DNA of 64,000 bases, taken from NCBI GenBank assembly GCA_037379345.1, contig CM074524.1:28206750-28270749 (forward strand), read 5' to 3'. Both the position numbers and the translations under genes were made by a program. The notes beneath the pieces were generated by a model. The model was given only the letters and a program-made list of their open reading frames with translations. It did not search any database and had not been told where the DNA came from. This stretch comes from Perna viridis (lineage: Eukaryota). Below, one piece after another: positions 4,155 through 13,255 of this stretch (position 1 is the stretch's first letter; each line of letters begins with the position of its first letter).

Positions 4155-4318
4155 ACCTCATTTGACATGTGTATAGAGAGATTCCTGAGACAAGCCTGAA
4201 CAGATCCTGGAGACTTACCGTGTTAGACTTGTGTATAGAGATTCCTGAGACAAGCCAGAACAGATCCTGGGGACTTACCTCGTTTGACCTGTGTATAGAG
4301 AGATTCCTGAGACAAGCC
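4155..4318. repeat. 60-62-bp tandem triplication of the exon end plus donor
   Basis: gtgtatagag(ag)attcctgagacaagcc recurs three times, each copy preceded by a plus-strand tacc donor. Confidence 0.93.
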
Positions 4319-4418
4319 ACAGCAGCTCCCAGAGTATTTCTATGTGAGGCTTTAGACTTGATTATGTTGTGTAGAAGAGGCAGGGCACCATACTGTACAA
4401 TTAAAACCTGATTCTCAT
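4279..4418 (-). CDS. VAC8: Vac8-like exon (DENQVLIVQYGALPLLHNIIKSKASHRNTLGAAVACLRNLSIHRSNE)
   Basis: 140 nt, phase 1-0. VACLRNLSIHRSNE matches Vac8 VACIRNISIHPLNE. Its 3' end and donor are triplicated downstream. Confidence 0.93.
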
Positions 4419-6790: not shown

Positions 6791-7080
6791 CAATGCATCA
6801 GCCAGAAATACAAGTCACAGAAGCAATGCATCGGCCAGAGATATAAACCACACAAGCAGTGCATCAGCCAGAAATATAAGTCACAGAAGCAATGCATGAG
6901 CCAGAAATATAGGCCAAAGAAGCAATGCATCAGCCAGAAATATAGGTCAGAGAAGCAATGCATCAGACAGAAATATAGGCCAGAGAAGAAATGCATCAAC
7001 TAGAACTATAAATCACAGATGCAATGCATCAGGCAGATATAGAAGTCACTAAGAAGTAATGCATTAGCTAGAAACATGAA
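6791..7080. repeat. 33-bp intronic minisatellite, about 9 degenerate copies
   Basis: Unit approximately gcaatgcatcagccagaaatataagtcacagaa. Explains the repetitive ORF at 6775-6999. Confidence 0.9.
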
Positions 7081-8142
7081 GTTGCACACATTGCCATGCC
7101 ATGCATAGCCCCATTCATAGAAGTTAATATTGGAGAGCAACCAAAATTGCTTACAACATATGATTGTTGTGACAAAATTTTGGAAGGACGGACATACGGA
7201 CAAGATTAATCCAAACTACCAAACATTTGTTAAATGTAGAAATAACATAAACCATACAAAAACATTTAATGATTTGGATCAATATAAGAGAAAACACAAA
7301 AAAACTTTTCTTTTTATACTAAATGATAATTGTACATAAAATATAGAAGTTGACTTGTTAGGCTTTATCTTAAAGAACATTTACAATTTGAATCTGGTCT
7401 ATCTTTATTTGAAGAAACTTATTACAAGAAATTATTTTAGGTAAGAAAAGTTGGAATTGACAGGTTGAAAACAAGCTAAGTTCATTGCAAGAATTATAGG
7501 TCATGGAGTACTATTTTTTATGGTTTTCTTGATTCAGTTCAACCACAAAATCACCACTGAAATGTAAAATCTCAAATGATAACCATAATGGTCGAATGGT
7601 ATCCAAGGACTTAAAAATTTCACAAAACAACTAATTTGACAAACCATGAAAATTTATACTTGAATATTGACAAATAAAAAATTGACAATTTGCGGAAATT
7701 CTCATAATCTTTTTTTTTTTAAACTGCCTCTTCAGTTCATTAGACTTCATCAAAATACCTATGTAGTTTTTGAGAACTTGGGCTTACACAATTTTAATAT
7801 GCCAACACATTTAAATGACATTATCTCACCTTACAGGCTGCCTCTTTAATGTAACTTATAGCTATCAAATTAAGTCTAATCAAAATCAACAGAGAAAGTC
7901 AGAACAAGATGTGTTTACCAAAAGTAAACATGTGAACCTTTTAAGGATTGTTTTACCTATAGGCATCAAAAAATTATTATTTTCCATCATGCATGTCTAC
8001 ATGTAATGCCTAACCTCCTTATAAAGTTTCGTATAATCAATCAAGCTGTTTAGAAGTGTGCTAACATTATGTGGGTAAGAGAATCAGAATAACAGATGAT
8101 CAGACAAACAGAATGACCCCAATCCACCTCAACCACGTGTAA

Positions 8143-9352: not shown

Positions 9353-9475
9353 GTTGATGGGTAAGGTTAAGTACAGCGCCAGCGGCATTTCGTTGGACTC
9401 TGAGATCGGAAGATTTCATCAGGTTCAGCAATGGTCTGATTCCATGGTTAGAAACAATCAATTGCTTGTTTGAAT
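9353..9475 (-). CDS. VAC8: Vac8-like ARM-repeat exon (DSNKQLIVSNHGIRPLLNLMKSSDLRVQRNAAGAVLNLTHQ)
   Basis: 123 nt, phase 1-1, ttgtag acceptor and GTAGGT donor. RVQRNAAGAVLNLTH matches Vac8 RVQRNATGALLNMTH. Confidence 0.95.
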
Positions 9476-10692
9476 CTACAAAGAAGGTATTGTAGTTTAA
9501 ACAAATGAAAATCTGTCAATGTAACACATTCCTGTTTTTGTTTCAGTCCTTACATGAAGGTATTTTACCCTGTATATATCTACTGCACCAAACAAAACAA
9601 TGTGAAAAACCATAATGGAACAGGTTATCCTTTCAAAAATCACATTTATTGTGCACATGAGAAAATAAATGTTTTACTGTCAGTTTCAAAACAAAAAATT
9701 TATTAGTACCATATGTCTTTTTTTTCACGTGCGGAAAATTTTGCATTTTATTCAAAAATTGGTAGAGGATTTTTTGTGTTATAATAATTGTGACAACAAG
9801 ATAAGACAAACATTAATAACCATTTTTTATCTTCATAAATATTTCACAATATAATTTTCACATTCCAACTTTGACTGGGAATTTAGAGAAAATTAAATCA
9901 CTGCAAAAATAACCACTGATACATTAAGTTTTTGCATTGTGATCCAGCTGACTGGCATTTGTCCATCATTCTCCATGTCTACTCCATTGACCTCAACATT
10001 GTTTTAAATACATGCATATATTGTGTAGTAACTGTTTAGAAATAACAGGAAAATTTCTGATGAACTGATAACATAAGGTAATCTTGATCCTGGAGGATCA
10101 TAAAAGAATCTGCATTTACGGCCCAAAATATGAAGAAAAGGTTGCTTGGGTCAAACAGCCATTCAAATGATTACCATTTGTTTTGTTAGTTATTTTGACA
10201 CTTTGTTTTCACACCTGAAACAACCATTCACTGATAATCAAAAAACATACCCTATTCAAATACCTAATTCAGTTGTAACTAACTCAGAGCTGTGTATAAT
10301 TATGTGTAAACAACACTTGTATATTTTTGTAATTTTTGAAAATTATAAAGATCTGTAATTTCCAAGTTTTTACATGTATGAATAAATAGTGCTATCACAG
10401 GAACGTTATGCATGGTTATGCAATATGTAATGAACCTATGGTAAGTACACAGAAGAAAAAATTGTTTCAATGCAAGATTTCATTAACATACTGCCTTGAT
10501 TCAAATTTTCAGTTATTTTTGTCGCTTTGCACAGCAATTACATGTTTACTGGTGTATAACTGGCAAGTGTACAATATATGTAAAGGTATACACATATCAT
10601 GATTGTTTTTTGTTTTGGAAAATGACAATGGTGGATACTCCAAGAATTCTTATTTTATTACAGCAAATCATAATGATCCATTAGATTGTTAT

Positions 10693-11000
10693 ACCAACCT
10701 GTAGTAGCCAAGGCAGTAATACCAACCTGTAGTAGCCAAAGCAGTAATACCAACCTGTAGTAGCCAAGGCAGTAATACCAACCTGTAGTAGCCAAGGCAG
10801 TAATACCAACCTGTAGTAGCCAAAGCAGTAATACCAACCTGTAGTAGCCAAGGCAGTAATACCAACCTGTAGTAGCCAAGGCAGTAATACCAACCTGTAG
10901 TAGCCAAGGCAGTAATACCAACCTGTAGTAGCCAAGGCAGTAATACCAACCTGTAGTAGCCAAAGCAGTAATACCAACCTGTAGTAGCCAAGGCAGTAAT
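10693..11000. repeat. 28-bp minisatellite x11 built from the exon end plus the 5' splice site
   Basis: Unit accaacctgtagtagccaa(g/a)gcagtaat, period 28, near-perfect copies. Confidence 0.97.
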
Positions 11001-11101
11001 ACAACCACATGTGTTACACTGCACTTCAATATTCTTAGAATGTAACAGTTGAACCAGAGGGGGGATAACTCCACAGGTCACCAACACTTCTTTATTTTCT
11101 G
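10979..11101 (-). CDS. VAC8: Vac8-like ARM-repeat exon (AENKEVLVTCGVIPPLVQLLHSKNIEVQCNTCGCITALATT)
   Basis: 123 nt to the first donor. NIEVQCNTCGCITALAT matches Vac8 NVEVQCNAVGCITNLAT. NAGNAG acceptor; donor repeated 11 times (see findings). Confidence 0.93.
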
Positions 11102-11164
11102 CTAAAATTATAGAAGCAGTAAAAATTGTTTACTTAAGTACGAGTCCACATAAAATTTTCCATA

Positions 11165-11531
11165 TTAAAGTGATTCATGGTGAAGAAAAACCCACCAAAC
11201 AAACAATGCTTTTTCAATCTGCATATGCTATATTTTTTACAAAACAGTTGTCCTTTCCTTATTTAGATCTGTACTTTTGAGAAAATCATACATTTATCTC
11301 CCACCAAAACCAACCAATTCATACAAAATCAAGATTGAGAACTGTTGCAAAGTGCTAATTTCATGTAAAATCTATATAAATTTTATCTTAAAAACGCAAC
11401 ACACATATGAAGAACTATGACTTGTTATGTGGTCTGTAACTGATTCTGAATAAGAAATAAAAGTGAATTCGGTGGGTTTTTGACATGCATGAATCACCTC
11501 CTGTCTGATTTTTATAAAGACTGCTACTTAA
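11165..11531 (+). mobile_element. Dispersed ~365-bp non-autonomous element (gtgattcatg...catgaatcac family)
   Basis: Related copies at about 386-735, 19731-20238 (interrupted by the MITE), 21010-21180 (deleted), 14187-14270 (partial) and 60485-60838 (reverse). Confidence 0.8.
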
Positions 11532-13255
11532 TACATGTACTTACAATGCAATAGCAGCTAATGGTTTTTTTAAAAGAAGACGCATGATTATTAAGACAAG
11601 GACAAGTAAAAACTTCATCTGATATTTCACTTCCATGACATATATACTGTGAAAGTACTTATATTCATGAAGTATCAATTTTCTTGTATTTCATTGTCGC
11701 TTTAAACTACAGAATTAAAATCCCAACAAAATACGAATTTCTGCTTATTTGTATTGTGGGAAATGTCAAAACACAAATTAAAAATCCACAAACCAATGAT
11801 TTGTCTACAATCCACAAAAACTGACTTCCTCCAATAAAAGTACTTTTACAGTTATATTTTTTTATATACCAAGACCTGTAGCTTTGTCAGTCAGTGGAGC
11901 AAAACAAAATATTGACTTGAACTGTAACCCATCAAGCTACCATAAAATACAAAAGATAAGATTTATATCGTTATATGTTTGGAATAAATACAAAAAAAAA
12001 AAAGCTTAATATCAATGAAAAATATTCAAAGTTTGTGGTAGTGGACAATTTTTTTTATCTTGAAACCAAGAATAGTACATCTTCTGTTATGCCTTTCCCA
12101 TTGGTGTTAACAAAAATTAAAGGAAGGAAATTCATATGATCTATATGAAACTAGCCTTGAATATTAAAAAAAAGCAACCAAGCTTTTGTTTATAAGTAGA
12201 ACAGCAACTTCATGGAAATATAAATTCATCCCCTTCTTGTTATGCAGAACAGAGGATGTCTCACTTAGCCTTGTATCAAGGAAGTTCAATACTTGATCAA
12301 GAATTGCCATTTCCTGAATTTAAAGTCAGATGGTTTTTAACAAAACTTTCCTTAATAAGAAGTTTTGATTGATTTTTTATATCCCTGCTCAATGAATCGA
12401 GTATAAACTGTCTGTCTATCTGTAAAATTTAGACTTCCATATAATAAACTATTTTCTATTTATGAGTAAATCAATATTGACTTCATTCATTTGCTAATCA
12501 CTTGTAAAAAAATCTAAAACGGGGTTTTCCACAAACAAATAAGGAATTTATATAAGTGGGTTTTAATATTTTTGGTTTGTCAATTTTTTTAATTTCTTTT
12601 TATCTGCAAGATGATTTTATCACAGCATTAAGGTTTTCAATAAAAAATTTTAATTTTTGTCTAAAGTTAATTTGCAGTTGGACTAAACTTTAAAAACAAT
12701 GCACATCAGTACATGAGAAAACAACAGTTTTTTGTAGTATCCACCTAAATTGGTCAAGATTAATAAGACATTCTAAGTCATTATATATCTTTTACACCTT
12801 TTTAAATAAAATCTCCAGAAAAAAAAAATACTATAAATTCCTATTGAAATGGGCAAAAGGAAAACCATTTAAAACAAAAAGTCTGAACTTTAGCTAAAAA
12901 AGCAAAGCTCTACGAAATAATTATTACTTATTTAAATATGAGATAAATGATCACTGTTATTATTTAAAGTGAATTATTTCAGGGGGAGAGTGGCACAAAA
13001 TACAAACAATAGATGGCATAATATTAACGTTTTCAAGGATAAGAAAAAAAAATTTGGAATTGTATGCAATTTGAATCTTGTTTTATAAACTTCATTTCCT
13101 AAATTTCTCCATGAACACAAAAATAATTAATTTAACAATATCAAATGACAGAAAATAAGATGGATTAGTGCTGGAGGTTTCAAAATTTCTTGTTTAAGGA
13201 TTCTTGGTTTTCCTGTAAGTAAAACATCTAAACTTCATTTAAAATTGGTTCTTAC

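What the first reader, a model, noticed from the sequence alone, without database searches (positions are those of the whole stretch)
10693..11000. Minisatellite made of eleven identical 5' splice sites in a coding gene
Seen: each 28-bp unit is 22 nt of exon end (ATTACTGC(C/T)TTGGCTACTACAG) plus the donor GTTGGT, giving 11 identical ACAG|GTTGGTAT donors. All three minus-strand frames are open across the array. Donors 1, 4, 7 and 10 are in frame and add 0, 28, 56 or 84 aa of hydrophobic GWYYC(L/F)GYYRLVLLPWLLQVGITALATT between ARM repeats. The other seven frameshift, including the most distal donor that abuts unique intron sequence (+280 nt). Microhomology between exonic GGTTGTAT and junctional GGTTGGTAT suggests a slippage origin. 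Inference: copy number could tune the ratio of productive to NMD transcripts.
Basis: partly seen in the sequence, partly recalled or inferred. Interest (0 to 1): 0.8.

Follow-up and report, generated by a model that had tools for sequence, protein, structure and literature searches.

The report
Repeated splice donors, only first used
A 28-base repeat copies the end of one exon plus its splice signal eleven times at the start of an intron, but RNA reads show only the first copy in use, as in the known repeat in the human clotting factor VII gene, so the array looks like a tolerated by-product rather than an expression dial.

Summary
Window 10691-11006 holds 11.3 copies of a 28-bp unit (97% match). 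Each unit is the last 22 nt of an exon plus GTTGGT, so there are 11 identical ACAG|GTTGGTAT donors on the minus strand. The gene is a single-copy Vac8-like armadillo-repeat gene, and the array is unique in the 723-Mb genome. A DNA run from another individual also shows it.

In two stranded RNA-seq runs all 8 informative junction reads join donor 1 (10979) to the acceptor at 9475. No read lies in the array interior. Minor use of donors 2-3 cannot be excluded.

This is a known kind. In human F7 intron 7 a 37-bp VNTR has a first monomer spanning the exon boundary, and only the most upstream donor is used (PMC1557585). That paper lists IFI6, CBS, LMNB2 and PDGF as similar cases.

New here: the orthologous junction also carries repeated exon-end plus donor copies in three or four other lineages, with 2, 3 and 22 copies and different unit lengths. 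The relative most similar across the alignable part of the exon has none. Only 1 of 14 control donor junctions does (Fisher p about 0.006), so this junction looks like a lasting duplication hot spot.

Earlier notes on this same window (s1-751516, s1-751554) flag the second duplicated donor at 4155-4318. The scan holds no note of this on other DNA.

The parts
10691..11006 (-). 28-bp minisatellite, 11.3 copies; its first unit spans the exon/intron boundary
   Evidence: TRF; sequence; unique in the genome
10979..11101 (-). Exon A (123 nt, phases 2/1), encoding one complete Arm repeat (ENKEVLV...CITALATT)
   Evidence: Pfam Arm E 4.7e-12, profile 3-39 of 41; Vac8 residues 108-146; RNA depth
10971..10982 (-). 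Authentic 5' splice site ACAG|GTTGGTAT (donor 1; cut between 10979 and 10978), the only one seen in RNA
   Evidence: Joint 9475/10979, skips 1503 nt, ends CT..AC (GT..AG on the minus strand), 3 + 5 reads in X21 and X22
10693..10978 (-). Ten further units, each with an identical pseudo-donor (cuts after 10951, 10923 ... 10699); removed as the first 280 nt of the intron
   Evidence: Sequence; zero RNA depth in 10736-10909
9476..10978 (-). Intron (1503 nt) as defined by RNA reads
   Evidence: table 5
9353..9475 (-). Exon B, the next Arm repeat (D-SNKQLIV...NLTHQ); acceptor tttgtag|A at 9475
   Evidence: Pfam Arm E 1.5e-11; Vac8 150-187; RNA depth 6-9x

Best explanation
This is a junction-spanning minisatellite. 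A 28-nt segment (the last 22 nt of exon A plus the first 6 nt of the intron) was duplicated, most likely by slippage or unequal exchange between the imperfect direct repeats GGTTGTAT and GGTTGGTAT that lie exactly 28 nt apart. It then expanded to 11 units. The first unit keeps the real exon end and donor. The splicing machinery uses only this most upstream donor, so the other ten identical donors are silent pseudo-sites, cut out as the first 280 nt of a 1503-nt intron. The mRNA encodes a gapless ARM3-ARM4 junction. The array is therefore a tolerated, probably neutral and probably length-variable intronic repeat, of the same kind as the human F7 intron 7 VNTR. It is not a dial for NMD. Shown: the array, its presence in a second individual, and donor-1 splicing. 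Inferred: the slippage origin, neutrality, and the rule that the most upstream donor wins, taken from the F7 work.
For: Array anatomy. The array is unique in the genome and the gene is single copy. RNA: the only joint listed for this intron is 9475/10979, with 8 reads, 6 distinct starts and long sides, and there is no coverage inside the array. Donor 1 gives exact collinearity with yeast Vac8: exon A = residues 108-147, the split codon = 148, exon B from 149. Each exon is one Arm repeat. An independent DNA run, X4, carries its own SNPs. Its contig breaks exactly one k-mer into the periodic sequence (10720), and word depth is raised over the array to 22.8 and 14.7 against 6-7 elsewhere, so the array is real and not private to the assembly. 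Precedent: in F7 IVS7 the 37-bp VNTR has 5-9 identical donors and only the most upstream is used, shown with 50 constructs. LMNB2 and PDGF behave likewise; IFI6 and CBS also use the two nearest pseudo-sites (PMC1557585). Duplications spanning donors but not acceptors fit such a rule: 2 of 10 donors and 0 of 9 acceptors in this gene.
Against: There are only 8 informative junction reads from one study. The listing threshold was 3 reads and 15 joints were not shown, so donors 2-3 could be used at up to a few tens of percent. NMD could remove frameshifted products. The array length in the RNA-sequenced animals is unknown. Recurrence of repeated donors at the same junction in other lineages is more than neutral chance predicts. 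It leaves room for selection or a local mutational bias that this explanation does not specify.
Confidence: 0.75

Rival explanations
1. One reading: the pseudo-donors are used, most of them frameshift, and array length sets the ratio of productive to NMD-degraded transcripts.
For: The eleven donors are identical from -24 to +8. Seven of the ten extra donors would shift the frame. IFI6 and CBS show that the nearest pseudo-sites can be used in such arrays (PMC1557585). Tandem-repeat length is associated with splicing at thousands of human loci (PMC10078293).
Against: No joint from any other donor is listed, and RNA depth in the array interior is zero in two runs. In F7 the pseudo-sites stay silent even when strengthened to 91% consensus.
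Confidence: 0.08
2. The reiterated donors are kept by selection at this junction. They might act as a U1 snRNP platform that supports recognition of a weak donor or of the 123-nt exon, or as a conditionally used unproductive splice choice. This would explain why relatives also carry donor repeats here.
For: Exon-end plus donor copies lie at the orthologous junction in L005 (22 copies, about 36 nt), L006 (2 copies, about 107 nt) and the L004/L007-L010/L012-L021 clade (3 copies with GGTAAG intact in all 14 of these contigs that reach far enough into the intron, from at least two species). Control donor junctions show this in 1 of 14 cases. The donor here, GTTGGT, is the only one of the ten in this gene without A at +3.
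Against: L011, the relative most similar over the part of the exon that aligns, has no significant repeat. Relatives with strong GTAAG donors also have repeats, so compensation for a weak site is not general. In the L005 array the donor core is no better conserved than the rest of the unit. Frame offsets of the extra donors are not conserved. Unit lengths differ in every lineage.
Confidence: 0.12
3. Assembly artefact: the array, or its length, was created by the assembler.
For: Short-period arrays can be mis-sized in assemblies. No long read was inspected here.
Against: An independent DNA run shows the graph break at the array edge and raised k-mer depth. The three T-variant units argue against simple stutter. 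Relatives have analogous arrays in independent assemblies.
Confidence: 0.03

Closest known systems
Human F7 intron 7 VNTR (37-bp minisatellite spanning the exon 7/IVS7 boundary; Borensztajn et al. 2006, PMC1557585)
   Same: The first monomer contains the exon end and the donor. The donor is a weak non-consensus site (F7 gugggu, here guuggu) repeated identically downstream. Only the most upstream site appears in mRNA. Some pseudo-sites would be in frame yet are not used.
   Different: F7's unit holds 4 exonic and 33 intronic nt in 5-9 copies. Here the unit holds 22 exonic and 6 intronic nt in 11 copies, spaced 28 nt. This is an invertebrate-type genome. Functional tests (mutating donor 1) and copy-number polymorphism are not shown here.
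Human IFI6 (6-16) intron 2 and CBS intron 13 junction minisatellites (as summarised in PMC1557585)
   Same: A minisatellite reiterates the donor many times (25 pseudo-sites in IFI6; 15-20 repeats in CBS).
   Different: In those genes the two nearest pseudo-sites are also used constitutively. Here no use of donors 2-3 was seen, but the data cannot exclude low use.
Human LMNB2 (100 bp x 10-15) and PDGF intron 4 (81 bp x 16-18) junction minisatellites (PMC1557585)
   Same: Only the authentic donor is used. The long units resemble the 87-107-nt repeats found in the relatives (L006, L009, L012).
   Different: The unit here is much shorter and mostly exonic.
Recursive-splicing ratchet points (juxtaposed 3' and 5' splice sites, AG|GT)
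   Same: Each unit contains CAG|GT, so splicing to that AG would regenerate a donor.
   Different: No polypyrimidine tract or branch-site context was seen by eye. The intron is only 1.5 kb. Relatives keep the GT but not the AG (CTG|GT, GTG|GT). No reads lie within the array.

Membership tests
Junction-spanning minisatellite with silent pseudo-donors (F7 IVS7 type) | Tandem array whose first monomer spans an exon-intron boundary | tested here: met
   The array at 10691-11006 starts inside exon A; the unit is 22 exonic plus 6 intronic nt. The exon boundary is fixed by RNA joints.
Junction-spanning minisatellite with silent pseudo-donors (F7 IVS7 type) | The donor sequence is repeated identically in the downstream monomers | tested here: met
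   Eleven ACAG|GTTGGTAT sites, identical from -24 to +8 except one C/T position at -14.
Junction-spanning minisatellite with silent pseudo-donors (F7 IVS7 type) | Only the most upstream donor is used in mature mRNA | tested here: met
   8 of 8 informative junction reads use donor 1, and there is no RNA coverage of the array interior. Power is limited for donors 2-3.
Junction-spanning minisatellite with silent pseudo-donors (F7 IVS7 type) | Copy number varies between individuals (VNTR) | tested here: inconclusive
   A second individual (X4) has at least 2 units, but k=31 contigs cannot count 28-bp units.
Junction-spanning minisatellite with silent pseudo-donors (F7 IVS7 type) | Pseudo-sites become active when the upstream site is inactivated | not testable with these tools
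   Needs a minigene or a natural donor-1 mutant.
Regulated unproductive splicing (alternative donor coupled to NMD) | Transcripts from the alternative, frame-shifting donors can be detected | tested here: not met
   No such joints are listed and array depth is zero. No NMD-inhibited sample was available.
Recursive splice sites | A functional 3' splice site (pyrimidine tract plus AG) directly before a regenerated donor, with the AG conserved | tested here: not met
   The AG is not kept in relatives' copies (CTG|GT, GTG|GT). No intra-array joints were seen.
Armadillo-repeat protein, Vac8-like | Tandem Arm repeats collinear with Vac8 | tested here: met
   Pfam Arm on exons A, B, C and 8. Vac8 E 3e-25 for exon A and 5e-18 for exon B, consecutive and gapless. 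The N-terminal exon is Cys-rich like Vac8. Orthology to fungal Vac8 as such was not tested.

The most novel reading that the evidence does not exclude
The boundary between ARM repeats 3 and 4 of this Vac8-like gene is a long-lived hot spot where extra copies of exon end plus donor are kept or regenerated in several animal lineages because they do something. They might load U1 snRNP for exon or donor recognition, or offer a conditionally used unproductive splice choice. The 11-donor array would then be the extreme form of a conserved regulatory device.
Probability: 0.12. Interest if true: 0.7.

Novelty: new member of a known kind. Interest (0 to 1): 0.38.

Why it matters
The array is a natural experiment on how a 5' splice site is chosen among identical competitors. 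Eleven equal donors 28 nt apart, with only the first used, extend the rule that the most upstream site wins, established on human F7, to a distant animal and to a much tighter spacing. The rule also explains why tandem duplications across donors are tolerated while those across acceptors are not. The recurrence of such repeats at one orthologous junction in several lineages is not explained. If it reflects selection rather than a mutational hot spot, it would point to a function for reiterated U1 sites. For annotation, gene predictors may read through the open frames of the array and produce false hydrophobic inserts.

Tried and rejected
1. RNA structure that would mask the downstream donors was rejected. 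Folding 10660-11050 (minus strand) gives -105.8 kcal/mol against a shuffle mean of -113.6, z = +1.3. The short hairpin I saw by eye in each unit is equally available to donor 1.

2. A coding role for the array was rejected. Its translation has no Pfam family above cut-off. Open frames in all three phases are expected for roughly 20-25% of 28-mers.

3. A transposon or dispersed-repeat origin was rejected. The unit occurs nowhere else in the genome.

4. A paralogue that could cover for a broken copy was not found. The exon matches only this locus in the genome.

5. Selection on the donor core was tested in the 22-copy array of L005. Conservation is uniform along the unit, so there is no evidence either way.

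6. The runs guessed to be RNA, with about 0.18 word share (X11-X20), are not good evidence of expression. X12 covers only a high-copy element at about 11160-11535.

7. Identifying the relatives' organisms through the literature by accession gave nothing.

8. L011's second CTACAG|GT at +35 is only an 8-nt match. It is not significant in the alignment test, so I do not count it.

Exons were searched one by one by reference.

Full report
OBSERVATION. The array is real and as described. Tandem Repeats Finder reports window 10691-11006 with period 28, 11.3 copies, 97% matches, no indels and score 604. On the minus strand the unit is the last 22 nt of an exon followed by GTTGGT, giving eleven identical ACAG|GTTGGTAT sites. 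A single C/T variable position carries T in units 2, 7 and 10. The open frames are not statistically remarkable for a 28-mer. The exonic GGTTGTAT and the junctional GGTTGGTAT lie exactly one period apart, which fits an origin by slippage or unequal exchange. The unit occurs nowhere else in the 723-Mb, 46-contig assembly.

GENE CONTEXT. The minus strand from about 16.2 kb down to below 0.7 kb carries a Vac8-like armadillo-repeat gene with at least ten exons in the window.
- Exon A (11101-10979) is one complete Arm repeat (Pfam E 4.7e-12). Exon B (9475-9353) is the next one (E 1.5e-11).
- Against yeast Vac8 structures, exon A covers residues 108-146 and exon B covers 150-187. Joining donor 1 to the 9475 acceptor therefore gives a gapless protein.
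- Any in-frame pseudo-donor would insert 28, 56 or 84 hydrophobic residues between two ARM repeats.
- The exon matches only this locus in the genome.
- Of the ten donors in the gene, this is the only one without A at +3, so it is a rather weak site.

RNA EVIDENCE.
- The only joint listed for this intron is 9475/10979. It skips 1503 nt with ends CT..AC, which is GT..AG on the minus strand.
- It is supported by 3 + 5 reads from 3 + 3 start positions, with up to 75 and 70 nt on the shorter side. That is far beyond the 24 nt that all donors share.
- Exon A is covered at about 4x and exon B at 6-9x. The bin 10736-10909, inside the array, has depth zero in both runs and both orientations.
- A trace of about 20 aligned bases per run at the distal edge of the array is what a junction read with a short, ambiguous overhang would produce.
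- Donor 1 is therefore the predominant donor and possibly the only one.
- Limits: only eight informative reads from one study; a three-read listing threshold, with 15 joints not shown; no NMD-inhibited sample; and unknown array length in those animals. Use of donors 2-3 at low level cannot be excluded.

REALITY OF THE ARRAY. Run X4 comes from a different sample and study and carries its own SNPs around the array (10443, 10631, 10674).
- Its contig 10376-10720 stops exactly where the first fully periodic 31-mer begins. That is expected only if the periodic sequence has more than one predecessor, which means at least two units.
- Word depth rises to 22.8 and 14.7 over the array, against 6-7 in the flanks.
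- The array is therefore neither an assembly artefact nor private to the reference animal. Copy number cannot be read from k=31 contigs.

COMPARATIVE EVIDENCE. Searching the exon's open frame against the protein collection returned short ORF fragments from genomic contigs of relatives, at 63-81% identity. Their contigs were fetched.
- The orthologous exon ends with the same CITALATT codons everywhere.
- In L005 the junction is followed by 21 further copies of exon end plus donor (GCTACCACAG|GTAAAC...). The period is about 36 nt and the array runs to the contig end.
- In L007/L008, and in L009, L010 and L012-L021 (14 contigs, including twelve from population runs of one species), there are three copies 86-107 nt apart. 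GGTAAG is intact in every copy. L004, of the same clade, ends 124 nt into the intron and shows only the start of the second copy.
- In L006 a second copy containing about 64 nt of exon plus the intron start lies about 100 nt downstream (alignment score 47 against a shuffle maximum of 17). It is interrupted by a SINE with a target-site duplication.
- L011 is the relative most similar over the part of the exon that aligns (81% over about half of the query; 70% over the whole exon). It has a 326-nt intron and no significant repeat.
- L005 and the three-copy clade share an approximately 18-nt ACCACAG periodicity at the intron start, so those two may not be independent.

CONTROLS. The same alignment test was applied to other donor junctions.
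- In this gene it is negative for eight donors and positive for one, the exon ending at 4282, where a 60-62-nt unit is present three times.
- It is negative for all five control junctions available in relatives.
- It is negative for all nine acceptors in this gene.
- Four of five lineages are positive at this junction against 1 of 14 control junctions, Fisher p about 0.006 by my own arithmetic. The lineages are few and partly related, so this is suggestive only.
- In the L005 array the donor core is not better conserved than the rest of the unit.
- The frame offsets of the extra donors differ between species.
- Neither of the last two results points to selection on the pseudo-donors as such.

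WHAT IS KNOWN. Borensztajn et al. 2006 (PMC1557585) describe exactly this architecture.
- The human F7 intron 7 VNTR has a 37-bp monomer whose first copy spans the exon 7 boundary. Its 5-9 identical weak donors (UGG|gugggu) are followed by the rule that only the most upstream is used.
- With 50 constructs the authors showed that the pseudo-sites are functional. They are out-competed by position even when strengthened to 91% consensus, and this holds in every cell type tested.
- The paper lists IFI6, CBS, LMNB2 and PDGF as further junction-spanning minisatellites. In IFI6 and CBS the two nearest pseudo-sites are also used.
- The present array is a new member of this kind. It sits in a distant animal, has a shorter and mostly exonic unit, and behaves in RNA as the F7 rule predicts.

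MECHANISM AND RIVALS. The most likely account (0.75) has three steps. Slippage between 28-nt-spaced microhomologies duplicated the junction. The array then expanded. Because the most upstream donor is chosen, the extra units are removed with the intron and the array is neutral.
- A selected role for reiterated donors, prompted by the recurrence in relatives, gets 0.12.
- An assembly artefact gets 0.03.
- Masking by RNA structure was tested and rejected (z = +1.3).

VERDICT. This is a new member of a known kind with moderate interest. The interest is raised somewhat by the unexplained persistence of donor repeats at the same junction across lineages and by a second duplicated donor in the same gene.

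Noticed in passing
window 4164-4319 (minus strand; exon ends at 4282): A second junction-spanning repeat in the same gene. About 38-40 nt of exon end plus 22 nt of intron occur three times (period 60-62, 88% match). This gives donors ACGAG|GTAAGT (authentic by homology), ACACG|GTAAGT (+60 nt, in frame, +20 aa) and ATGAG|GTAGGA (+122 nt, frameshift). The orthologous junction in L011 has no repeat. No RNA was laid here.
   Followed up: partly
window about 11160-11535: A high-copy dispersed element in the intron just upstream of exon A. Word depth reaches tens of thousands in the DNA run, there are hundreds of RNA reads on both strands, and most reads run on into unrelated sequence. This element, not the exons, explains the 0.17-0.19 word share of run X12, and probably of the other runs guessed to be RNA.
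   Followed up: no
L011:699-736: In this relative the in-frame donor is a weak CTACAG|GTACAT. A consensus-like CTACAG|GTGAGT lies 35 nt downstream and would shift the frame. By sequence, the downstream site is the one homologous to the first donor of L006.
   Followed up: partly
L006:4380-4655: A tRNA-like SINE sits inside the second junction copy, flanked by a 13-nt target-site duplication (ATGTCATCTAATT).
   Followed up: partly
window 6791-7082: A 33-bp x 8.8 minisatellite (80% match) lies deep in the 4-kb intron between exon D and the next exon. It is not at a junction and shows no clear donor motif.
   Followed up: no
window 33822-35072 (minus) and 26359-28143 (minus): An intronless 417-aa ORF looks like a seven-transmembrane receptor. 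Nearby are fragments of a reverse-transcriptase-bearing retroelement (YADD motif).
   Followed up: no
L011:2991-3176: In this relative, exon D and the following exon of the window's gene form one continuous exon. The 4-kb intron present in the window is absent there.
   Followed up: no
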